The notes below the pieces were generated by a model that made no database searches, was not told where the DNA came from, and saw only the letters and a list, made by a program, of their open reading frames with translations. This document shows positions 1 through 46,858 of a stretch of DNA of 64,000 bases, piece after piece. Within the stretch, counting starts at the first letter, position 1, and each line of letters starts with the position of its first letter. The stretch spans positions 1-64,000 of IMG/VR virus record IMGVR_UViG_3300042566_001512. One strand, written 5' to 3'. The translations under genes and the position numbers were made by a program.

Positions 1-92
1 AGTTCTTTAAACGTAACAACGATACCGATCTTGAACTTGCAGTCGCTGGTATGATTCTGTATTACGTAGACGTAAACAACATACCTATCTAA
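1..92 (+). CDS. 3' end of a gene entering the window (…FFKRNNDTDLELAVAGMILYYVDVNNIPI*), function unknown
   Basis: Open frame from nt 3 to TAA at 90-92, followed by hairpin at 136-170. Confidence 0.5.
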   Translation, partial: FFKRNNDTDLELAVAGMILYYVDVNNIPI

Positions 93-135
93 AGACGGTT
101 AATAATGAAATATTACGAAAAAGATTCTTAAATAA

Positions 136-170
136 CATAAATGGTTAGGGTTAAACCCTAACCATTTATG
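136..170. terminator. Inverted-repeat hairpin, CATA…TATG family
   Basis: cataaatggttagggt-taa-accctaaccatttatg. Confidence 0.7.
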
Positions 171-386
171 ACGTAATTATTAGCATTTTTAATTAAATTG
201 TATATACGACCAAAATAAAGAAAGCTTCATCGTGATTAACCTCAAAGTCATCAAACGACAATCTCAGCCAGATACTCTCCAGTGCCGATCCACTACTGAG
301 TTTAATATTGGCTCGACATATAAGAAAAGTAATAGTTTTCCGTTTGAACAGGTATTTGGTTTTACTAATTTTACGGAGAAACTGTA

Positions 387-9588: not shown

Positions 9589-9913
9589 AAACGAATACTA
9601 CGCCAGACTAACACCGGACGATAAAACAGAAATAATACAACAGGCATTTGATGTTTTATCAGATCGGTATTGGCACGAACAAAATCAAGGAAAGAAATAC
9701 GTAGTACTAGATTTACTTAAAACAAAACCGCTGGAGCACAAACGCTCCAGCGTAGATTCTTTATTTAATTTTTTGTGTTTTGAATTAGAGATTCTAATAA
9801 AAGAGCATCTTCGCTCAGAACTCGAACTAATAAAGCATATACAGGATTTTGCCTTGATAAATAATTTGATTGTTATACAGTTTACTAAAGGAATTAAAAA
9901 ATATGTTTTATAA
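9533..9913 (+). CDS. Hypothetical protein (array member 6)
   Basis: 126 aa, GGAG RBS. Confidence 0.7.
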   Translation: MNSIRLLLDTRCLFKYLGENEYYARLTPDDKTEIIQQAFDVLSDRYWHEQNQGKKYVVLDLLKTKPLEHKRSSVDSLFNFLCFELEILIKEHLRSELELIKHIQDFALINNLIVIQFTKGIKKYVL

Positions 9914-10298
9914 CTTAGAATTAGGAAAGTCCTACGATTTTACCTTATACGCAAGCGGTGTTCTTGGCTCCGGATTTAGGAACTCAAAAGTGGTAGGCAT
10001 AATGGACTACGACTCCGCTAAATATATACAGGATGTTTCTCCCCTGCATATTCAAGCTTATCCTCAGCTTCCTAGCGGAACCCCTAGGAACGCCAGAGAC
10101 TTAGTATATGTGAAAATAAAAACGCCACTAAACGAGCTACGTGTTATAGCCATGGATTGGATATCGTCCGTTCCGGTTCTTGTTACATCGCAGGCCGCCA
10201 GAGTTACTATTAGCCAAATAAGCTCATCTGACGTTAGCATTATTAGGGACCTTCTCGTCGTCAACGGATACCCTAATTTAGACATCCAGCTTTTGTAA
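9903..10298 (+). CDS. Conserved hypothetical protein (phiKZ gp49-like)
   Basis: ATG 9903 with AAAGGA RBS; last gene before the polymerase. Confidence 0.65.
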   Translation: MFYNLELGKSYDFTLYASGVLGSGFRNSKVVGIMDYDSAKYIQDVSPLHIQAYPQLPSGTPRNARDLVYVKIKTPLNELRVIAMDWISSVPVLVTSQAARVTISQISSSDVSIIRDLLVVNGYPNLDIQLL

Positions 10299-10311
10299 AC
10301 GTATATTGTAT

Positions 10312-10696
10312 GTGCGCAACTAATTGATGTGCGCGCCAGTTTTGCTGTTCCGTCACTCTTTTGGCTGACTTGATCCTATTAGCTCCGTTTACGAAATTGC
10401 AAATGATCCATCTGCGTCATTTTTGCTCTAAACGAGAACGCTACTGAAAGATCAACGCTCAGTTGGGAGAGTGACGGGACACATTTATGATGTTTAATAG
10501 TATGGCTAGGAAATGCGGGTCCTGGCCAATAGCATTCGACGAGTCGGCATGTTTTTTCATCTTAGTTCAAATTGGCGTTTCGGTTTCCTTTAGCTGATTG
10601 AATTGATTTGCTTTTAACCGCAGGTAAGTCGTTTGCGTCCTTTGTTGTGTTGAGTGGGTAGTAAATAGGGAGGGGCATTGCCCCTCCCTATTTATG
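10312..10696 (+). ncRNA. Candidate structured non-coding RNA
   Basis: No ORF of 60 aa or more; nested G-U-containing helices 10333-42/10569-78, 10346-59/10468-81, 10361-68/10459-66, 10370-75/10450-55, 10386-91/10429-34; ends in a hairpin. Confidence 0.6.
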
Positions 10697-10738
10697 TTTA
10701 CAACATAAATGCCCATGGCAGGCCCATGGGCATTTATG
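10662..10738. terminator. Two tandem hairpins
   Basis: taaatagggaggggca/tgcccctccctattta and cataaatgcccatgg/ccatgggcatttatg. Confidence 0.75.
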
Positions 10739-10816
10739 ACATATTTTTAAAAAATCAATATCTTTGCAAGATACTTTGAATGAGCTATAAACGAATAACC
10801 TTAAGGATGGCAGATA

Positions 10817-12964
10817 ATGTCTAAAAATCCATTTGTACTTGCAACATCGGAATATAAAAGAGACATCAATATAATAAAACACTATGTTGACCAGCAAGCA
10901 TCTTATCTTAGCATATCTACTGGTAAAGATTTAAACACGTGTATTGAATTTGTTAAATCCAGCCTAAGAAAAGGCGGACAGTTTGAATTTAAAGACCCCA
11001 AGATAAAGTATCTGGAAAGGGGTGATAACGGGGATAGAACAGAAAAGGAAGGAACTGCTTGGGCCTACATATCTGAATCTGTTAAGAACAGAGAACTGAT
11101 TTCCCCGACACTTACTACATATGTTCACCCAGACGTAAAGGGGTCTTTGCTTTCGGGATTCCTTGAGAAAAACGTGGCCCTTAGAAACAAAGCTAAGAAA
11201 GAGATGTTTGAGGCTCAGGTGAACAAAAACACAGAAGTGGCCCAGATGAAAGCCACTGAGCAAAAACAAAATAAACTATCAAACAACAGCGTATCGGGGA
11301 TGCACTGTTCCCCCGCTAATCCAATATATAACGAAACCGGGCACTCGACTCTCACCAGTAACTGCAGAAGCACTTCCGGTTATGGGAACGCTAACAACGA
11401 AAAGTTTTTAGCCGGAAATAGGCACTATTATAACCACCACATCGTCTTAAATAACATAATGTCTATCGTGACCAACGTAGATTATTCTTTAATGGACGAA
11501 GTTATAAAAAAGTACGGGCTTTGCTACCCTAGCGTGGAACAGACCCTCGATTGTATAAAATACTCATCTAACCTTTATTGGTGGGAGAGTCACTATTTCA
11601 GAAAAATAGAAGACCTAGTATGTAAACTAACCCCACTTCAACGAGCTGCGTTTGTGTACGTAGGGGACTTTTATCATTTGATGAAATTTAACGATGAGTT
11701 TGTAAGGGGCTTCTTAGGTGAACTGACAAAGAAGGTCGAGTGCAAGTTTGACGGTAATCCGGTGGATTACATAAGGTCATCTGATGAAATATACGTAAAC
11801 ATGGCTCACCAGATCTGCGCACAGGAAGTAAAGGGATTTGGTAAGAAGTACGATCAGCTAAAAGAAGAAGATGTTAACACGCTAGCGTGCACAGTAAGAA
11901 ACATAGAAAGCTGTTTTAATAATCATTCTGATCTGGTTAAAGCCTTTTGGGTAACCACTAACATGCCAAGCTCAATGGCGTACTTCCCCACTAGCTTAAG
12001 AAGAGTGGCGCTAACCAGTGATACCGACTCCACTATATTTACCGTTCAATCGTGGATACATTGGTATCGTGGATATTACACAATGGACGACGGGGCCATT
12101 GCTCTAATTGGTGCACTTACTGCATTGGCTTCATTGACGATTATTCACGTGTTAGCAATGATGTCTGCTAACTTTGGCATAGTAGAAAAACACATTCATC
12201 GAATAGAGATGAAAAACGAGTATAGGTTTGACGTATTCGTCCCTACTCAGCTAGGAAAACATTATTACGCAAACATGGGCTGCCAAGAAGGTAACGTGTT
12301 TGAAAAACACAAAATGGAAATAAAAGGAGTATATCTTAAAAGCTCAAATTTGCCTGGCATAATAAATAAAAAGGCCCAGGAAATGATGAAGCGAATTACA
12401 GATGAGGTCATGACTATAGGGAAAGAAAACCCCAGGCCTATAAGCATAAAAAAATATATTAAAGAAGTAGCAGACATAGAGCGCCTGATAGTCGATTCTA
12501 TAAAGAATGGCGAAACCTACTTTCTTAAGTCATCCAGCATAAAAGACGCTCAAAGCTATTCTAAAGAAGGTAACGAATCGCCTTATAAACATCATTTATT
12601 CTGGAACGAAGTATTTGGAAATAAGTACGGAATTGTTCCCGAACCACCATATAGCACAATTAAAGTATCTACCATAATTGAAAATAGGACAGACCTCAAG
12701 AAATGGCTAGACTCTATACAAGACCCTACAATTAAAAATAAAATAGAAAACTGGATAAGTAGGACCGGTAAGGATAGTTTTGGAACATTTAACCTTCCTA
12801 CACAGGTTCTCAAAAATACAGGTATACCGATTGAAATAACCGGCATAATCAACTACAAAAAAATCATTATTGATCTTTGTTCTATATTTTACTTAATTTT
12901 GGAAACCCTGGGCGTCTACCTTTATGATGATAAGGTAGCTAGATTGGCCAGCGATTTTTACTAG
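10817..12964 (+). CDS. Family B DNA polymerase, polymerase subunit (phiKZ gp50-like)
   Basis: Motif B KLSNNSVSG, motif C SDTDS, KHYY, EIKGV; lacks exonuclease and motif A. Confidence 0.88.
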   Translation: MSKNPFVLATSEYKRDINIIKHYVDQQASYLSISTGKDLNTCIEFVKSSLRKGGQFEFKDPKIKYLERGDNGDRTEKEGTAWAYISESVKNRELISPTLTTYVHPDVKGSLLSGFLEKNVALRNKAKKEMFEAQVNKNTEVAQMKATEQKQNKLSNNSVSGMHCSPANPIYNETGHSTLTSNCRSTSGYGNANNEKFLAGNRHYYNHHIVLNNIMSIVTNVDYSLMDEVIKKYGLCYPSVEQTLDCIKYSSNLYWWESHYFRKIEDLVCKLTPLQRAAFVYVGDFYHLMKFNDEFVRGFLGELTKKVECKFDGNPVDYIRSSDEIYVNMAHQICAQEVKGFGKKYDQLKEEDVNTLACTVRNIESCFNNHSDLVKAFWVTTNMPSSMAYFPTSLRRVALTSDTDSTIFTVQSWIHWYRGYYTMDDGAIALIGALTALASLTIIHVLAMMSANFGIVEKHIHRIEMKNEYRFDVFVPTQLGKHYYANMGCQEGNVFEKHKMEIKGVYLKSSNLPGIINKKAQEMMKRITDEVMTIGKENPRPISIKKYIKEVADIERLIVDSIKNGETYFLKSSSIKDAQSYSKEGNESPYKHHLFWNEVFGNKYGIVPEPPYSTIKVSTIIENRTDLKKWLDSIQDPTIKNKIENWISRTGKDSFGTFNLPTQVLKNTGIPIEITGIINYKKIIIDLCSIFYLILETLGVYLYDDKVARLASDFY

Positions 12965-17655: not shown

Positions 17656-18379
17656 AAACCTAAATTGCCGTATTTAAACCTTTTTAACTGCGGGAAAGCC
17701 CTTAGAGCTTCGTCTACCAAGCCAGAGCAGAAATGTATCTGGTGGCCAGCGTAATTAACTGGGTATGGTAAAAATGGCGAAGATTGGGTAATCCGCAGCG
17801 AAGTCTCACGTATTCAGTATTGGTAACATAGCAAAGGAGCAAAAGATGACTGTAATCCAAATCAATACTGAAGATCAACTGTATAGTGCAATTCAGAACT
17901 CAATAGGTAAAAGCCGTTGCAAAAAGGTGCGAGTAATGGAGAACGGGAAGTCATACGAGGACTATTCCATCAGCTATACTCTTGCTCCAGTAAAAGCCAT
18001 TGCTAACTTCACTATCGATATTGAAGACGGTAACGTCGTCATTAAGAAGAAAGCAAAAACCAGCACACGGCACGTCCTGTTCAAAGCGGGGTCTATGGTG
18101 GAGATAAGTATAGCGAACAAAAAGGCACCTTATCTGAAAGTAAACGTGCTAAACGAGGTTCGCTACACAGACGGCACGCACCGATATCAAAAATGAAAAG
18201 CACTGAATCCGTGAGAAACGTTCAACGACTAGACCGTAAGGTCGTACACTCAAGTGAGTGGAAATGGAAGGTACGTCGCAATTCTAACTGCGACGTAAAG
18301 AGATAGTCTGGACTGTGCGGAAACGTACAGAAGCTGAAAAACAGCTCAAGTAGATTAACGACCTATTTGTAACTTATCG
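17656..18379 (+). mobile_element. Group I intron (IA2-like) inside the catalytic NADFDG|D motif
   Basis: P1 acggtaa/ttgccgt with U-G at splice site; P AACTGCGGGAAA 17686; Q AATCCGCAGC 17790; R GTTCAACGACTA 18220; S AGAGATAGTC; P7 GACTA/TAGTC; P7.1, P7.2, P8, P9; terminal G 18379; splicing restores NADFDGDQMN. Confidence 0.93.
17846..18196 (+). CDS. Intron-encoded 116-aa basic protein, no recognisable homing-endonuclease motif
   Basis: AAAGGAG RBS; lies in the P6 loop closed by tctcacg-attcagt/actgaat-cgtgaga. Confidence 0.8.
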   Translation: MTVIQINTEDQLYSAIQNSIGKSRCKKVRVMENGKSYEDYSISYTLAPVKAIANFTIDIEDGNVVIKKKAKTSTRHVLFKAGSMVEISIANKKAPYLKVNVLNEVRYTDGTHRYQK

Positions 18380-18604
18380 GATCAAATGAACTTAACTTTG
18401 TGTTTGGATAATGAAGCGGCCGATCAGGCAGAGCCACTTTCCCCTCACAAAAACCTACTGGACATTCACAACCCCAGAAAGCTAAGCGGAATCGCGGCTC
18501 TGCCGAAACCGGTGGTAAGTACCATTGCCCATTGGCTACACAGGCCAAGGGATTTGCCGGTTGAAGAAAGACACACTTCTTTCTTAAATAGCATATCGAC
18601 GTAG
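18380..18604 (+). CDS. nvRNAP beta' N-terminal subunit, exon 2
   Basis: DQMNLTLCLD…LSPHKN completes the catalytic motif. Confidence 0.88.
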   Translation, partial: DQMNLTLCLDNEAADQAEPLSPHKNLLDIHNPRKLSGIAALPKPVVSTIAHWLHRPRDLPVEERHTSFLNSIST

Positions 18605-18614
18605 AGGGAAACAA

Positions 18615-23237: not shown

Positions 23238-23247
23238 AATAGAGAAA

Positions 23248-23305
23248 TAAACCCCTTACCTGACTGTAGCTAAAAATATAGCTACGGGTCGGTAAGGGGT
23301 GTTAT
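23248..23305. terminator. Long imperfect hairpin
   Basis: ataaccccttacc-tgac-tgtagcta…tagctacg-ggtc-ggtaagggg-tgttat. Confidence 0.65.
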
Positions 23306-23402
23306 TTCCATTTAGTATAAATATACATTTAGTTAATTTCGATCTTATATCCAAGACCAAGTGTAAGATTGGGCAGTGGTGTTAGCCACCGAAAGGGAAA
23401 CA

Positions 23403-23669
23403 ATGGGACAAGCTAAATTGCGAGGCTCTTTTGAGCAACGACAAGCACAAGGTATTCTTAAGCGGCAAGCAGAAGAACAAATTACAGCAGAAAAAGTTCG
23501 ACTGGCAAAAATCGAACAAGCCAAACGCTTTGCCGACATGTCGCCAGAACAAAGATCGCGAGCAATAAAAAGTCGAAGCGCACTTGCGGCATTGTCGGCA
23601 GTGATAGCGGCAAGCCAAGCGCAAAAAGTTGATTTTGCAAATGCGGTTGAGCGCTTCAAGGCAGGCTAA
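23403..23669 (+). CDS. Small helical hypothetical protein
   Basis: ATG 23403 with AAGGG RBS; MGQAKLRG N-terminus. Confidence 0.7.
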   Translation: MGQAKLRGSFEQRQAQGILKRQAEEQITAEKVRLAKIEQAKRFADMSPEQRSRAIKSRSALAALSAVIAASQAQKVDFANAVERFKAG

Positions 23670-23693
23670 AAGCTATAAGCTTTTTGAAAATAA

Positions 23694-23717
23694 TTTCAGA
23701 CGCATATTACCACTATG
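23694..23717 (+). promoter_or_regulatory. Putative early promoter
   Basis: tttcagacgcatattac-cacta-tg. Confidence 0.65.
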
Positions 23718-23749
23718 TCAAGCACTCAAACGCTGTTAAGGAAAACTAA

Positions 23750-28136: not shown

Positions 28137-28334
28137 ATGTCAATTATTAACCAAACCAAATGCTACTTTGACGGCTACCTTAAAAGCCCACCCGGAGTCA
28201 GTGAAGACCGACTTAGGGCATATCAGCTACCTAGCATGGTAAACGGTAAACGACAAAAACCCACAAACTCAAAATACACTGTACTTGGAAACACGAAGCA
28301 ACAAGCAGGCGATAATAACCAGCACATTAAGTAA
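28137..28334 (+). CDS. Small hypothetical protein
   Basis: 65-aa ORF ending before a hairpin. Confidence 0.55.
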   Translation: MSIINQTKCYFDGYLKSPPGVSEDRLRAYQLPSMVNGKRQKPTNSKYTVLGNTKQQAGDNNQHIK

Positions 28335-28348
28335 AACTTAATAGACGT

Positions 28349-28389
28349 CATAATAGGCTATGGATGTTCAGGCATCCATAGCCTATTTA
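28349..28389. terminator. Hairpin between convergent genes
   Basis: aataggctatggatg/catccatagcctatt, preceded by CATA. Confidence 0.75.
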
Positions 28390-33015: not shown

Positions 33016-33025
33016 TCCAACTATA

Positions 33026-33054
33026 AGACTGTCGGGAATAAAACCCGACAGTCT
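33026..33054 (+). terminator. Hairpin after the RNAP genes
   Basis: agactgtcggg/cccgacagtct. Confidence 0.65.
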
Positions 33055-33074
33055 CTTTATTTAAAAGGATAAAA

Positions 33075-33341
33075 ATGCAAATTTTAGCAGAGGTAAGTTT
33101 TTGCGATCTGCGTGTTGGGGATAGGGTAAAATCAAAAAACACAGGCAGAGAGGGGTTTATACGAAACCTTATAGATATAACCGAAGCGCGCCGACGAGAC
33201 GACAACGAAATAGTCATATATTGGGAAAACGGGAACGTGTCTTATCATTGGCAATATATGTACGTTAATGTATGGTTAATGTTATTCTATCTTATATATA
33301 AAACTAAAGGAATATTACCGTATAACTACCTACCGACTTGA
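33075..33341 (+). CDS. Small KOW/SH3-like hypothetical protein
   Basis: AAAAGGA RBS; DLRVGDRVKS…G…G pattern. Confidence 0.55.
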   Translation: MQILAEVSFCDLRVGDRVKSKNTGREGFIRNLIDITEARRRDDNEIVIYWENGNVSYHWQYMYVNVWLMLFYLIYKTKGILPYNYLPT

Positions 33342-33370
33342 TACATACGTCAAGTCGGTAGGTAGTTATA
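33321..33370. repeat. Perfect 21-bp inverted repeat
   Basis: tataactacctaccgacttga-N8-tcaagtcggtaggtagttata. Confidence 0.85.
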
Positions 33371-33491
33371 AACGGTTTAGTTTTTACATATTTATAATTT
33401 GTTTGCCGCAGATAGTAAATATATAAAAATTGCAAATAAAGTAAGTGGATGTTTGTTTAAGAAAACCTAGTCGTCGCTTTTTTGACGATTT

Positions 33492-39702: not shown

Positions 39703-39749
39703 AAAGTAATAAATAAATATATTTATTAAAGATAAAAAAGGAGTAATAC

Positions 39750-39932
39750 TTGAATAAAAGCACTAAATTATTGCTAGTGGGCGTTTTCTTAATTGTTCTA
39801 TTTTCATTCTTCTTAAGAGGGGTCTCTGAGAAAGAAACTGAGAAAATCATCAACGCCTGGAAACTGGAATTGTTAAAAATGGCAGAGCAAGATAGGGAGT
39901 CTCTTTTTAAAGCGGGAGCTTTTACTAAGTGA
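39750..39932 (+). CDS. Small membrane protein
   Basis: AAGGAG RBS, TTG start, N-terminal TM helix. Confidence 0.65.
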   Translation: MNKSTKLLLVGVFLIVLFSFFLRGVSEKETEKIINAWKLELLKMAEQDRESLFKAGAFTK

Positions 39933-39935
39933 CGT

Positions 39936-39971
39936 CATAATGCCCTCTGGAATCATCCAGAGGGCATTATG
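39936..39971. terminator. Hairpin between convergent genes, CATA…TATG family
   Basis: cataatgccctctgga/tccagagggcattatg. Confidence 0.8.
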
Positions 39972-39972
39972 C

Positions 39973-40467
39973 TTATCTTTGAGCTTTTTGAATTTCTTCT
40001 ATTGCTTTTATATCCGAATTAACCTTTGCGGTTAATCTCTTTTGACTATCTTTTAAAATGTAGTCGCATATTACACGAGGATATTGTAAAAACTCTTGTA
40101 AGTTTATACCGTAAAACTCCTTAACATTAGAATCGGCAAAAGCTTTTATAGTGTCAAAAGTTTTACTATATATAAAAGTGTCCTCTCCATTCTGATAGGC
40201 AACGGAGGATAAGGGGCGCACATCGTCTAAGCTAGATGGGTTTGCATCCAGGCTGGCTTGCTTTAGGTAGTCAAATACACCAGAAGACTGCTCATAGGAC
40301 TGAACTAGGAGCTGTTTAACCCCTATGTATGTATCTTTTTTTGCAGTTCTGAGTATCTGAACCAGTAATTCGTTTTGATTTGCTCTAGTACAGAAATCGT
40401 GATCTGTTACATGAGCAACTATCGTTGCTCTATCCGACGAATCTTCTGTACGGCTAATATAAAAAAA
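39973..40467 (-). CDS. -1 frameshift extension (gpT-like) of the 40419..41894 gene
   Basis: 164 sense codons open from the T7 run; no ATG/GTG/TTG in the first 82 codons; FYGINLQEFLQYP motif. Confidence 0.7.
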   Translation of the reverse strand, partial: FFYISRTEDSSDRATIVAHVTDHDFCTRANQNELLVQILRTAKKDTYIGVKQLLVQSYEQSSGVFDYLKQASLDANPSSLDDVRPLSSVAYQNGEDTFIYSKTFDTIKAFADSNVKEFYGINLQEFLQYPRVICDYILKDSQKRLTAKVNSDIKAIEEIQKAQR

Positions 40468-41894
40468 TTAGACATTACCTCGATTGGGATTAGTCCTTGC
40501 ATGTGATGATTTTCTCTTAGCTCTCTTTGCTCTTTTCCGCAGGAGGGGCATTTATAAGTAGGTATTGCAATGAGCGATACCGTAGAATCATCGATGAATT
40601 CTTTTATTTTTGTTTGAAAAGTCGTTCGAAGCTGATCATCTGCGGATACGTCTCCGACCACGTTTTCAATTTCTTCTCTTTCCGAATATTCGGTGTCTAA
40701 GTAGTTTATTGATTTTACGAAATGCGCATATTGCCTCATCACGGTAGCCTTAGCCTGCTTAATGAGATATTCGTCTCGTTCCTTCTCGTCCTGTATTAGA
40801 ACTTTAGGATAAGTCTCTTCTATTTCAGAAATCCACCTATAACCGGAATCTATGTGTTCTTGCGCAGTATCTATGGCTATAGTAAAGCTCAAATCTTCGC
40901 TTAGCTTAATAGCCCTGGGATGACCATTTAAGAATTCGTCCTTATAGATGCTCAACGATTCCACCGAGACGCTTGCCTTGTCGCGTTTTGCCATGTGTGC
41001 GATTTGTCTTGCCGTAAGACGTGTCTTGTCAACAAAAAGCAACTTAGATGGATCTAAAAGCTCCGTTACCACATGGCTGCACCTCTCGGGATCACTGGTA
41101 CATGCTCTTTGGTATTGAACCCCGTTTGGCCAAATGGCGCAAACCATCCCCCAAAAAAGGGTTGGCATATCCAGTACATTCATATATTTTTTTATGCTGT
41201 CCCCGTCTGGCAAAATAAGACTAGTGCTCAATATGTGATCTTCGCAGAAGTTCAACATTGCTGCAGAAGAAAAAGAGGTATTGTTGGAGAAGATTAAACC
41301 ATAGGTTGCTCTTCCTAGGCTAACCTTCTCCTCGGTCAAGGCCCTGTACAGCTCCAAAATAGCAGACTCTGAAGGGGCTTTAAATCTAACCCAGAATCCA
41401 GAATGCCACAACGGAACATTAAATGTACCGCCCAGATCAAGGGACTGCCTGATCATCAGGCGAAGGTTTTCACCAGTGAGTTTTTGATTTGGGCCCACCT
41501 TGGCTTTTGCCATCCCTAGGAAAAGAGGCCCTACCGAGGAATCTATCTTCTGTTGAAAATGTGCATCTGCTCTACTTACTGTTGGTACAAAAGCACTGCC
41601 ATAGGCCACAGATTCCATAGACCCCTGCAAAACAGACAGCCAGTGGGAATTAAAGTCAGATACTTTATTGCCCACTTTTGTAACCCGGTCTCTAACAGAA
41701 TCGGACAGATCCGACGGAAGCACGATATTTTCTTTTTCAAAATCTATGCCGTCCTGTAGAGGTTTGCTATATTCTCCATCCAACGTGAAATTAGCAGGAA
41801 GTGGAGTTACTACTTTCGGTTGTTCGGAATCAAACTTTTCAGAATCGTTTTTTGGTTCTGGAATTTCTGGTAAAAAGTCTTCTACGATTGACAT
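40419..41894 (-). CDS. Conserved protein (phiKZ gp77-like); putative baseplate-hub/tail assembly chaperone with CPSCG Zn finger
   Basis: VPLWHSGFW, C-x6-C, CPSCG; ends in the slippery NFF sequence. Confidence 0.7.
   Translation of the reverse strand: MSIVEDFLPEIPEPKNDSEKFDSEQPKVVTPLPANFTLDGEYSKPLQDGIDFEKENIVLPSDLSDSVRDRVTKVGNKVSDFNSHWLSVLQGSMESVAYGSAFVPTVSRADAHFQQKIDSSVGPLFLGMAKAKVGPNQKLTGENLRLMIRQSLDLGGTFNVPLWHSGFWVRFKAPSESAILELYRALTEEKVSLGRATYGLIFSNNTSFSSAAMLNFCEDHILSTSLILPDGDSIKKYMNVLDMPTLFWGMVCAIWPNGVQYQRACTSDPERCSHVVTELLDPSKLLFVDKTRLTARQIAHMAKRDKASVSVESLSIYKDEFLNGHPRAIKLSEDLSFTIAIDTAQEHIDSGYRWISEIEETYPKVLIQDEKERDEYLIKQAKATVMRQYAHFVKSINYLDTEYSEREEIENVVGDVSADDQLRTTFQTKIKEFIDDSTVSLIAIPTYKCPSCGKEQRELRENHHMQGLIPIEVMSNFFILAVQKIRRIEQR
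40461..40467 (-). promoter_or_regulatory. Slippery heptamer T TTT TTT (-1 programmed frameshift site)
   Basis: In-frame AAT TTT TTT ATA; GAGGT SD-like sequence 9 nt upstream. Confidence 0.65.
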
Positions 41895-46133: not shown

Positions 46134-46455
46134 TTAAATATTTTTATTGAACGCTTCTAACATCTGATCCAGGTTAGGCATTCCCAACAGATTAGTGCAA
46201 ATCTCTACTGCGTTTACGTGTCCAGCGGAAAGATTTATGGTGCACATTCTTTTTGTATGTTCATCTACTCCTTCTACTGAGGATAACTCTTTTTTAGTAG
46301 TTTCCTTTGAGATGTTTAATGCTATCCCTCCATTAGGGTAAGACCCAGCAACGTCAAGGTCAACGGCACCGATTCTTATATTAGTCCTTAAATTTGGGTT
46401 TTCTTTTATTAAACAAATCCCATTATCATCAACCAGATATGATTGTAACATAACA
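46134..46455 (-). CDS. DNA polymerase exonuclease/motif-A subunit, exon 2
   Basis: PolB motif A DLDVAGSYP, ALNISKET. Confidence 0.82.
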
Positions 46456-46858
46456 CTATATTGTTCAGACAGATTCGCTACTACCTATCCCGCATTTCTA
46501 AATGCGAAAGCTACATGTCTCCATGTAGAACAGACCATATCTTCGCCCATTTATGGCGGATACCTTTTCCACTTGGCTTCAAGTGTACTCCCTGGGATGG
46601 GATGGTCGTTGAACCTTACGCGTATCCTGCTTCACAGCGGTATTTAGCGTCTTGGCTGCTGATTGTCTCTATTCAATTAATTTTCAAACCTTTTCGCATA
46701 GACTTTCGTCTTTCGTTTTGGTCTAATTGACTTGGCGAGAGTTTCCAGCAATTAAATATCTTTTTCGATGCGAATTTCTGCGCAAAGGGACTGCTGGATA
46801 AAAACAAAAAAACATTCTATTTAAAAGAAAGTTTTTCATATGTTTTTATACCGATTTA
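46456..46858 (-). mobile_element. ORF-less group I intron (IA2-like), 403 nt
   Basis: Minus strand: P AATTGCTGGAAA, Q AATCAGCAGC, R GGTTCAACGACCA, S AAGATATGGTCT, P7 GACCA/TGGTC; exon GGAT|T pairs with AGTCC (plus 46788-92) giving a U-G pair; terminal G 46456; splicing restores GWIVMLQS. Confidence 0.88.

What the first reader, a model, noticed from the sequence alone, without database searches (positions are those of the whole stretch)
10312..10696. About 380-nt structured ncRNA candidate upstream of the DNA polymerase, with an anti-Shine-Dalgarno-like 3' domain
Seen: an ORF-free gap in a densely packed operon. It starts at a promoter-like tatattgTATGtg and ends in a 16-bp hairpin. It can fold into a long bulged rod (10346-59/10468-81, 10361-68/10459-66, 10370-75/10450-55, 10386-91/10429-34, 10399-406/10417-26), a side hairpin (10503-11/10520-28) and a closing helix (10333-42/10569-78). 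The G-U pairs favour the plus strand. The U-rich 3' part has TTTTTCAT, TTTCCTTTAG (10584-93) and GTCCTTTG, complementary to AUG and AAAGGA RBS contexts. 10584-93 is the exact complement of the nvRNAP beta RBS region (28843-52). Inference: a 6S-like RNAP decoy or a trans-acting translational/mRNA-routing RNA.
Basis: partly seen in the sequence, partly recalled or inferred. Interest (0 to 1): 0.72.

Follow-up and report, generated by a model that had tools for sequence, protein, structure and literature searches.

The report
Conserved structured RNA beside jumbo-phage polymerase
The gap upstream of the DNA polymerase gene of this nucleus-forming jumbo phage encodes a real, evolutionarily conserved, highly folded non-coding RNA that no database lists, and its most conserved exposed loop mimics the part of the ribosome that recognises messenger RNAs.

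Summary
Window 10299-10816 is an ORF-free gap between the SH3DP gene (phiKZ gp49-like) and the divergent DNA polymerase (gp50-like) of a chimallivirus-type jumbo phage.

Sixteen related metagenomic phages (polymerase 63-87% identical) carry the same element. Paired columns keep pairing through compensatory changes: rod 19 of 30 pairs, 3' domain 26 of 52, and 0 of 500 shuffles reach the observed score. G-U cells outnumber A-C cells 112 to 9, so selection acts on a plus-strand RNA. Rfam has no match. No ORF on either strand is conserved.

There are two domains. The first is a ~140-nt bulged rod ending in a U-run plus TATG. The second is a ~205-nt 3' domain with invariant exposed elements and an intrinsic terminator. 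Many other chimallivirus lineages have a 250-855-nt gap at the same place, and it usually presents a pyrimidine-rich, anti-Shine-Dalgarno-like apical loop.

A 6S-like identity is not supported. The match to the nvRNAP beta RBS is real but only the generic complement of this phage's SD consensus. Function is inferred; a trans-acting RBS-pairing or decoy RNA is my leading guess. I found no usable expression data.

The parts
9870..10298 (+). Upstream flanking gene: SH3-fold protein associated with phage DNA polymerases (phiKZ gp49-like). No terminator lies between its stop codon and the element.
   Evidence: Pfam PF20287 E 3e-22; phrog_3235; synteny in all relatives
10304..10313 (+). P1: conserved TATTGTATGT motif right after the stop codon. 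TATG is at 10309-10312, so G10312 would be +1 by the phiKZ late-promoter rule.
   Evidence: Conserved in alignment. TATG is intact in 6 of 8 relatives aligned; two have TGTG. Rule from PMC4666361. Activity not tested.
10312..10336 (+). H1: small 5' hairpin, present in all relatives with different sequence.
   Evidence: MFE
10343..10483 (+). Long bulged rod (about 60 bp), apex near 10410-10413. The lower half covaries; the apical half varies in length and sequence.
   Evidence: Covariation: 30 pairs, 95% paired, 19 with double changes, score 0.523 vs 0.277 in shuffles, 0/500. G-U 35 vs A-C 2.
10367..10375 (+). 5' strand of the sequence-invariant core helix of the rod (GACTTGATC). It pairs with 10450-10460.
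   Evidence: Invariant columns; pairs
10450..10458 (+). 3' strand of the core helix (GATCAACGC). AACGC is invariant; C10456 and C10458 are single-nucleotide bulges.
10483..10492 (+). U-run after the rod plus a second TATG (10486-10489). This is the same hairpin-TTATGmyrT module that recurs in other intergenic regions of the window. Likely terminator of the upstream unit and promoter P2 of the 3' domain.
   Evidence: TATG present in 8 of 9 relatives. Function inferred.
10503..10528 (+). H3: 9-bp covarying stem with an invariant 8-nt loop AATGCGGG (10512-10519).
   Evidence: 99% paired, 4 of 9 pairs with double changes; U-G pairs valid only on the plus strand. Loop unpaired probability 0.63-0.80.
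10532..10636 (+). H4: long irregular hairpin whose arms covary.
10577..10593 (+). Apical loop of H4 with the invariant GTTTCCTTT(A/G)G (10583-10593), the anti-SD-like element.
   Evidence: Invariant in 9 sequences. Unpaired probability 0.46-0.97. Complement of the phage SD consensus AAAGGAAA.
10635..10658 (+). Invariant stretch GCGTCCTTTGTTGTGTTGAGTGGG just before the terminator. It is unpaired in the consensus structure.
   Evidence: Near-identical in most relatives; L023, L030, L031 and L018 carry variants.
10661..10696 (+). T1: 15-16-bp GC-rich hairpin followed by a U-rich run. It is the intrinsic terminator of the element, and its base overlaps a TATG (10693-10696).
   Evidence: 100% paired, 10 of 15 pairs with double changes in 16 sequences
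10704..10738 (.). T2: symmetric hairpin that reads as hairpin+TTTATG on both strands. TATG 10734-10737 is the likely polymerase promoter. T2 is absent in three relatives, and in five a 418-aa gene lies between T1 and T2.
10738..10816 (+). Polymerase 5' leader with SD AAGGA at 10803-10807.
10817..12964 (+). Downstream flanking gene: divergent family B DNA polymerase (phiKZ gp50-like).
   Evidence: PF20286 E 8e-243; phrog_2927

Best explanation
This is a previously undescribed family of plus-strand structured non-coding RNA. It is encoded at a fixed place, between the SH3-fold protein gene and the divergent DNA polymerase gene, in a clade of nucleus-forming (chimallivirus-type) jumbo phages.

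It has two independently folding domains. Domain A (about 10312-10483) is a small hairpin plus a ~60-bp bulged rod with a sequence-invariant core helix carrying two bulged C. It ends in a U-run, so it can terminate the upstream operon and may be a protein or RNase III site. Domain B (about 10489-10700, ~205 nt) starts at a TATG promoter-type motif directly after the rod and ends at the intrinsic terminator T1.

Domain B holds three invariant elements: the loop AAUGCGGG, the apical pyrimidine loop GUUUCCUUUGG, and GCGUCCUUUGUUGUGUUGAGUGGG, which is unpaired in the consensus structure.

My committed mechanism, which is inferred, is that domain B is released as a free small RNA that acts in trans. 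Its exposed anti-Shine-Dalgarno-like pyrimidine elements would pair with purine-rich ribosome-binding sites (AAAGGAAA-type) to damp or time translation. A closely related variant is that it soaks up a factor that binds such pyrimidine tracts.

Shown: conservation, structure, strand, absence of coding, terminator. Inferred: promoters, the transcript ends, release as a separate RNA, and trans action.
For: Structure far beyond chance.

Same gap and same fold in 16 relatives whose sequence has diverged.

Covariation with both controls:
- Rod: covariation score 0.523 vs 0.277 in shuffles and <=0.13 when the partners are slid.
- Domain B: 0.453 vs 0.278 and <=0.17; 0 of 500 shuffles reach the observed value.
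- With 16 sequences, 33 of 52 pairs show double changes.

Strand: 112 G-U cells vs 9 A-C cells. The plus strand also folds better than the minus strand in 26 of 27 further lineages.

Non-coding: the plus-strand ORF from the post-rod ATG is 5-50 codons long with frame changes between conserved blocks, and the minus-strand ORF start is not conserved.

Free-standing unit: in five relatives a 418-aa internal-head-protein-like gene sits between T1 and the polymerase promoter, so the RNA is not simply the polymerase leader.

Exposed invariant loops.

The pyrimidine loop is the complement of the phage's SD consensus.

The loop recurs elsewhere. A hairpin loop with at least 7 pyrimidines including CCU is found in 15 of 26 lineages of SH3DP-polymerase gaps, against 2.1 expected from shuffles and 0 on the minus strand. 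The loops read CCUCC-type in GC-richer phages and UUCCUU-type in AT-rich ones.

TATG with G as +1 is the phiKZ nvRNAP late-promoter rule (PMC4666361). Hairpin+TTATG modules recur in the window's intergenic regions.
Against: No expression evidence. One metatranscriptome contig of depth 2 touches 10363-10396 as a strand-switched chimera, and no RNA run was listed for the element itself.

No specific target. Duplex energies of the three conserved elements against 204 crude translation-initiation regions of the same genome are no better than for shuffled seeds.

An anti-SD complement is generic, so it would hit phage and host messages alike. The CCUCC versus UUCCUU trend is confounded with GC content.

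The 24-nt invariance of the 3' stretch exceeds what SD pairing needs, which points to a more specific partner.

P1 and P2 are each imperfect in some relatives (TGTG in two, CATG in one).
Confidence: 0.4

Rival explanations
1. The element is purely cis-acting transcript architecture. The rod is an oversized terminator or RNase III processing and 3'-stabilising hairpin for the SH3DP operon. Domain B is a long leader, or a prematurely terminated 5'UTR fragment, that tunes read-through into whatever gene follows. On this view it has no trans function.
For: No terminator lies between the SH3DP stop codon and the rod, whereas phiKZ, PhiPA3 and 201phi2-1 have an ordinary terminator+TATG at that spot. 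The rod is followed by a U-run in most relatives. Terminator-then-TATG modules are the normal punctuation of this phage. phiKZ has 17 reported 5'UTR-derived short RNAs made by premature termination (PMC10914365).
Against: A 12-16-bp hairpin suffices elsewhere in the window. Termination does not explain a 60-bp rod with an invariant bulged core, nor three invariant elements that are unpaired in the consensus structure. The downstream gene differs among relatives, being either the polymerase or a 418-aa gene. T1 is immediately followed by that gene's own promoter motif.
Confidence: 0.22
2. The RNA is a protein-binding decoy or scaffold. Possibilities are a 6S-like trap for a phage or host RNA polymerase, a sponge for ribosomal protein S1 or another pyrimidine-tract binder, or a platform recognised through the bulged core helix and the AAUGCGGG loop.
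For: Sequence invariance inside a helix (core of the rod) and in loops is typical of protein recognition. The invariant 3' stretch is longer than a seed needs to be. The rod-like shape superficially recalls 6S.
Against: For 6S specifically: no Rfam hit, and no central open-promoter-like bubble. No candidate protein was tested.
Confidence: 0.18
3. The RNA belongs to the replication module. It could be an origin or primer transcript, or a regulator bound by the polymerase or by the SH3-fold partner protein, as T4 gp43 binds its own mRNA operator.
For: It keeps strict synteny between two genes that Pfam describes as a functional pair across very diverse lineages. The 3' element is G/U-rich and lies next to an AT-rich stretch.
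Against: The evidence is positional only. Cumulative GC skew shows no extremum at the locus, although the contig is about 76% complete. Some chimalliviruses have only 3-100 nt there. A 418-aa structural gene can be inserted between the RNA and the polymerase.
Confidence: 0.12
4. The functional product is on the minus strand: either a leader for the 33-codon ORF (10560-10459) or a CsrA/RsmA-type sponge with GGA loops.
For: On the minus strand the pyrimidine elements read AAAGGAAAC and CAAAGGAC. T2 is symmetric and carries a minus-strand TATG.
Against: G-U 112 vs A-C 9 in paired columns. The minus strand folds 33 kcal/mol worse. The ORF start is not conserved and lies 28 nt from the GGA. Pyrimidine loops score 0 of 26 on the minus strand.
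Confidence: 0.02

Closest known systems
Short non-coding RNAs of phiKZ and 201phi2-1 found by ONT-cappable-seq (PMC10914365; PMC11512511, e.g. sRNA005 upstream of the tail gene)
   Same: Jumbo-phage intergenic or 5'UTR units bounded by a phage promoter and an intrinsic terminator, conserved by genomic position, function unknown.
   Different: Those are mostly under 250 nt and lie at other loci. None is reported in the text of the two papers read (their supplementary tables were not held) for the gp49-gp50 gap. The CM built here does not hit phiKZ, PhiPA3 or 201phi2-1. This element has two domains and about 390 nt, and is supported by covariation but not by expression data.
6S RNA
   Same: Roughly 150-190-nt irregular rod-shaped RNA.
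   Different: No central bubble, no Rfam match, and the conserved part is a short helix with two bulged C. Polymerase binding is untested.
Base-pairing sRNAs with C/U-rich loops that occlude Shine-Dalgarno sequences (Staphylococcus RNAIII and RsaE, Bacillus RoxS; from my own knowledge)
   Same: Pyrimidine-rich apical loop complementary to the SD, presented on a stable hairpin, followed by a terminator.
   Different: Those use UCCC motifs, are cellular, and have defined regulons. Here the motif is UUUCCUUU or UUCCUCCUU with U-rich flanks, the RNA is phage-encoded, and targets are unknown.
RNase III processing hairpins between phage T7 early genes (from my own knowledge)
   Same: Long bulged hairpins in intercistronic regions of a phage operon, with a conserved internal loop.
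   Different: T7 sites are about 60 nt, whereas this rod is about 140 nt. Cleavage is untested.
CsrB/RsmZ-type sponges
   Same: Repeated short motif displayed in hairpin loops.
   Different: They would need GGA on the transcribed strand. Here GGA is on the strand that is not under structural selection.

Membership tests
Any Rfam 15 family (4227 models) | Covariance-model match at or near the gathering score | tested here: not met
   In the window, the best hit is 27.7 bits against a cut-off of 43, and all hits lie on the terminator hairpins. Seven relatives give no hit at E<=0.01.
6S RNA | Match to the Rfam 6S models | tested here: not met
   E<=10: none
6S RNA | Large central bubble flanked by long helices, mimicking an open promoter | tested here: not met
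   The rod 10343-10483 has only 1-4-nt bulges. The conserved internal feature is two single C bulges.
6S RNA | Binds RNA polymerase and templates a product RNA | not testable with these tools
   Needs biochemistry
Conserved structured ncRNA (generic criteria) | Base pairs maintained by compensatory changes above shuffled and slid controls | tested here: met
Conserved structured ncRNA (generic criteria) | No conserved ORF on either strand | tested here: met
Intrinsic (Rho-independent) terminator, T1 | GC-rich stem followed by a U-rich run, with the stem conserved by covariation on the transcribed strand | tested here: met
   Note that the consensus scan lists T2 (10704-10738) but not T1.
phiKZ-type nvRNAP late promoter | TATG with G as +1 (PMC4666361) | tested here: inconclusive
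   The motif is present at 10309-12, 10486-89, 10693-96 and 10734-37 and is mostly conserved. [quoted passage not shown]
Trans-acting base-pairing sRNA | Discrete transcript with its own promoter and terminator | tested here: inconclusive
   Sequence signals only. The read data are uninformative.
Trans-acting base-pairing sRNA | Conserved accessible seed | tested here: met
Trans-acting base-pairing sRNA | Specific, conserved complementary target | tested here: not met
   Only the generic SD complement was found. Energies are not better than for shuffled seeds. Relatives' genomes were not available for target conservation.
5'UTR-derived attenuator of the polymerase gene | Always directly upstream of, and co-oriented with, the regulated gene | tested here: not met
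   In 5 of 16 relatives a 418-aa gene lies between T1 and the polymerase promoter.
CsrA/RsmA sponge | Multiple GGA motifs in loops of the transcribed strand | tested here: not met
   Selection is on the opposite strand.

The most novel reading that the evidence does not exclude
A large subgroup of nucleus-forming jumbo phages keeps, between its polymerase-partner gene and its DNA polymerase gene, a dedicated structured RNA. Its hallmark is an exposed mimic of the 16S anti-Shine-Dalgarno tail.

The RNA would capture ribosome-binding sites, or the factors that read them, giving the phage an RNA-based global control over which messages are translated. This would be an RNA counterpart of the T4 RegA protein. 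Alternatively, the RNA could be a cofactor of the SH3DP and polymerase replication pair.
Probability: 0.3. Interest if true: 0.85.

Novelty: new variant of a known kind. Interest (0 to 1): 0.7.

Why it matters
Non-coding RNAs of jumbo phages have so far been seen only as short transcripts in two or three model phages. A 2026 review says only that they 'suggest potential roles' (PMC13282480).

This locus has several advantages:
- Its position is fixed by synteny.
- Its structure is supported by covariation.
- Its invariant exposed motifs give a concrete hypothesis that can be mutated.
- It appears to extend over many chimallivirus lineages, including cultured ones such as Burkholderia phage FLC9.

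If the anti-SD loop is functional, it would be a new way for a phage that separates transcription from translation to govern translation. Even if the function is different, the element needs annotation. In 201phi2-1 the equivalent 544-nt gap is currently annotated with a hypothetical minus-strand ORF.

Tried and rejected
**Database and sequence searches**
- Rfam on the window and on seven relatives: nothing.
- tRNA and tmRNA scan: none.
- BLAST of the region against 50,697 phage records, near and distant modes: no match.
- Exact 18-mer scan of IMG/VR: only L004 plus one chance hit inside an ORF.
- A looser pattern scan returned over 119 unspecific hits and was not followed up.
- No paralogue of either domain in the 208.8-kb contig.

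**Expression data**
- Sequencing runs: the only RNA run touching the area gives one 197-nt contig of depth 2. It joins 10128-10290 to 10396-10363 on the opposite strand, which is uninformative.
- A 484-nt contig spanning 10307-10790 comes from a run of guessed DNA type.
- Supplementary tables of the two cappable-seq papers are not held, so I could not see whether a short RNA was recorded in the phiKZ or 201phi2-1 gp49-gp50 gap.

**Function tests**
- GC skew as an origin test: monotonic, uninformative.
- Target search by duplex energy: not above shuffled seeds.
- Plus-strand small ORF from the post-rod ATG: not conserved.
- Minus-strand 33-codon ORF: not conserved.
- Long-range closing helix: not conserved.

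**Reach of the model**
- The CM of domain B does not reach the FLC9 clade, L019, L020, phiKZ, PhiPA3 or 201phi2-1.
- It gives only marginal syntenic hits in L169 (E 0.005) and L172 (E 0.045).
- The 'superfamily' therefore rests on synteny, strand bias and the shared loop type, not on demonstrated homology.

Full report
**Context.** The window is the first 64 kb of a 208.8-kb IMG/VR contig, estimated at about 76% complete. It encodes chimallin, nvRNAP beta and a divergent family B DNA polymerase, so it is a nucleus-forming, phiKZ-like jumbo phage. The nearest cultured relative is Burkholderia phage FLC9, at only 49.5% polymerase identity. The finding lies between the SH3-fold gene PF20287, 'associated with phage DNA polymerases' (9870-10298, phiKZ gp49-like), and the polymerase PF20286 (10817-12964, gp50-like).

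**The observation.** The 518-nt gap has no ORF above 49 codons.
- The plus strand of 10312-10696 folds to -142.8 kcal/mol (z -7.2); the minus strand folds to -108.7.
- Among 14 intergenic gaps of the window, this one is the clear outlier in folding z-score.

**Relatives.** A protein search with the polymerase found many metagenomic relatives at 63-87% identity. I fetched 12 contigs plus IMG/VR and JGI loci.
- Ten carry an SH3DP gene, then a 380-575-nt gap, then the polymerase.
- In five others a 418-aa phiKZ internal-head-protein-like gene lies just upstream of the polymerase. A profile search shows that the 3' end of the element, with its terminator, sits directly upstream of that inserted gene.
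- The element is therefore present in all 16. It is a free-standing unit, not simply the polymerase leader.

**Structure and strand.** The sequences have diverged greatly in the helices but fold the same way.
- Rod (8 sequences): RNAalifold plus pair counting give 30 pairs, 95% of cells paired, 19 pairs with changes on both sides, and a covariation score of 0.523. Shuffles give 0.277 and slid partners at most 0.13.
- 3' domain: 52 pairs, 89.5% paired, 26 double changes, score 0.453 against 0.278 and at most 0.17. In both cases 0 of 500 shuffles reach the observed value.
- With 16 sequences aligned to a covariance model, 33 of 52 pairs show double changes. That alignment is fitted to the model, so it leans towards the structure.
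- In paired columns there are 112 G-U cells and 9 A-C cells. A DNA-level palindrome or a minus-strand RNA would not give this asymmetry.

**Not coding.** The ORF that starts at the post-rod ATG is 5 to 50 codons long in different relatives, and the conserved nucleotide blocks fall in different frames. The start of the minus-strand 33-codon ORF is absent elsewhere.

**Anatomy, in window coordinates.**
- **P1 motif:** TATTGTATGT (10304-13).
- **H1:** 10312-36.
- **Rod:** 10343-10483. Its invariant core is GACUUGAUC paired with GAUCAA-C-G-C, where two C are bulged.
- **U-run plus TATG:** 10483-92.
- **H3:** 10503-28, with invariant loop AAUGCGGG.
- **H4:** 10532-10636, with invariant GUUUCCUUU(A/G)G in its apical loop.
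- **Invariant stretch:** 10635-58, unpaired in the consensus structure.
- **T1:** 10661-96.
- **T2:** a symmetric hairpin at 10704-38.
- **Polymerase promoter-type TATG:** 10734-37.

Folded alone, 10484-10700 adopts the family consensus. In the full-length fold a window-specific long-range helix competes with H4, and that helix is not conserved.

phiKZ late promoters are TATG with G as +1 (PMC4666361). Hairpin-then-TTATGmyrT modules recur in other intergenic regions of this window. The rod plus its TATG is a giant version of that module. Domain B is therefore most simply a separate ~205-nt unit. This transcript model is inferred from sequence only.

**The anti-SD element.**
- The loop motif is the exact complement of AAAGGAAA, which is the extended SD consensus of this phage. 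In 204 crudely called RBS windows, the 8-mer occurs in 14, AAAGGAA in 30 and AAAGGA in 47.
One of the two extra positions is not conserved.
- Duplex energies of the three conserved elements against all translation-initiation regions are no better than for shuffled seeds.
- Across the family, the H3 and H4 loop motifs are mostly unpaired (0.46-0.97, against a mean of 0.31-0.35 over all positions). The 3' stretch is variable in this respect.

**Breadth.** With the FLC9 polymerase as query, 46 further IMG/VR loci were fetched.
- In about 27 of them (polymerase 46-92% identical to FLC9) the SH3DP-polymerase gap is 250-855 nt. A more distant group has about 100 nt, and one locus has 3 nt.
- The plus strand folds better than the minus strand in 26 of 27 gaps.
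- The FLC9 clade has its own conserved fold: 100 predicted pairs, 24 with double changes in six sequences, and invariant loops CCUCCUCC and UUUCCUCCUUGUUU.
- By a strict criterion (an MFE hairpin loop with at least 7 consecutive pyrimidines including CCU), 15 of 26 lineages qualify. Shuffles predict 2.1, and the minus strand gives 0.
- The domain-B covariance model does not detect these distant RNAs, apart from marginal syntenic hits in two lineages. I therefore call this a shared design at a shared locus, not proven homology.
- phiKZ and PhiPA3 have only about 200 nt there. That gap holds a terminator, a TATG, about 100 nt and a second terminator, and the two phages share a 21-nt motif. 201phi2-1 has 544 nt, annotated as a minus-strand hypothetical ORF.

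**Interpretation.**
- About 0.9 confidence: this is a real, conserved, plus-strand structured non-coding RNA absent from Rfam.
- About 0.6 confidence: domain B is a separate small RNA.
- About 0.3 confidence: it acts in trans through the anti-SD-like loop.
- The rivals are cis-only punctuation or processing, a protein decoy or scaffold (a 6S-like role is unlikely), and a replication-linked role suggested only by synteny.

**Expression.** Public reads gave nothing usable. The literature held here reports other short RNAs in phiKZ and 201phi2-1, but none at this locus in the text I could read.

Noticed in passing
L023, L025, L027, L028, L030 (about 113-1400 in each locus): In five close relatives a 416-428-aa gene is inserted between terminator T1 of the RNA and the T2/polymerase promoter. 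The copy tested, in L025, matches Pfam phiKZ_IP (internal head protein). The gene uses the TATG at the base of T1 as its apparent promoter.
   Followed up: partly
window 133-170, 10704-10738, about 28325-28357, about 39912-39944: Recurrent module: a 12-16-bp hairpin whose base runs into TTATGACGT-like sequence. Two copies are symmetric and read the same on both strands. It looks like combined terminator and promoter punctuation of the phage transcription programme.
   Followed up: partly
window about 46475-46500, inside the 394-nt gap 46452-46845: A 10-11-nt exact complement (CCCGCATTTC) of the invariant H3 loop region lies in another long non-coding gap, within a small palindrome that also contains AAATGCG. 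About 0.1-1 such matches are expected by chance. It could be a kissing partner or could mean nothing.
   Followed up: no
window 1-386, 18197-18614, 23238-23749, 33016-33491, 39703-40418: Several other intergenic gaps of 390-716 nt have moderate folding z-scores (-2 to -6). They were not examined for conservation and may hold further non-coding elements.
   Followed up: no
L013:1959-2494 (Burkholderia phage FLC9), L006/L158, L155, L156, L165: The FLC9 clade has its own ~500-nt conserved structured RNA at the same locus. It has an invariant 5' block (CCGUAAUGUUCUGAAGAGAA), invariant loops CCUCCUCC and UUUCCUCCUUGUUU, and compensatory changes. It is unannotated in the FLC9 record.
   Followed up: partly
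L035:12378-12578 (phiKZ 40377-40577) and L034:1796-1979 (PhiPA3): The short gp49-gp50 gaps of phiKZ and PhiPA3 each hold a terminator+TATG, about 100 nt and a second terminator. They share ATGTGAATGTAA(G/T)TTGATGTG. This may be a miniature counterpart of the element.
   Followed up: no
L033:1548-1985 (201phi2-1 gp82): The 544-nt gap of 201phi2-1 is annotated as a 145-aa minus-strand hypothetical protein. Given what occupies this locus elsewhere, that annotation deserves a check. Plus and minus strands fold about equally there.
   Followed up: no
L018:100-300: One relative has an extra ~190-nt highly structured insert between T1 and T2. It contains no tRNA.
   Followed up: partly
window 10307-10790 in run X3: In a low-coverage wastewater run of guessed DNA type, the longest contig on the 5-kb stretch (484 nt, against about 150-230 nt for the others) spans the element from just before P1's TATG to about 50 nt beyond T2. 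If that library contained RNA, this would be an expression signal. It cannot be told from the data given.
   Followed up: no
All loci, just upstream of the polymerase gene: The sequence TTTATGCCGT (or TTATGACGT) after a terminator, 70-100 nt before the polymerase start, is conserved from the window clade to the FLC9, L166, L170 and L172 lineages. It is a deeply conserved polymerase promoter motif.
   Followed up: partly
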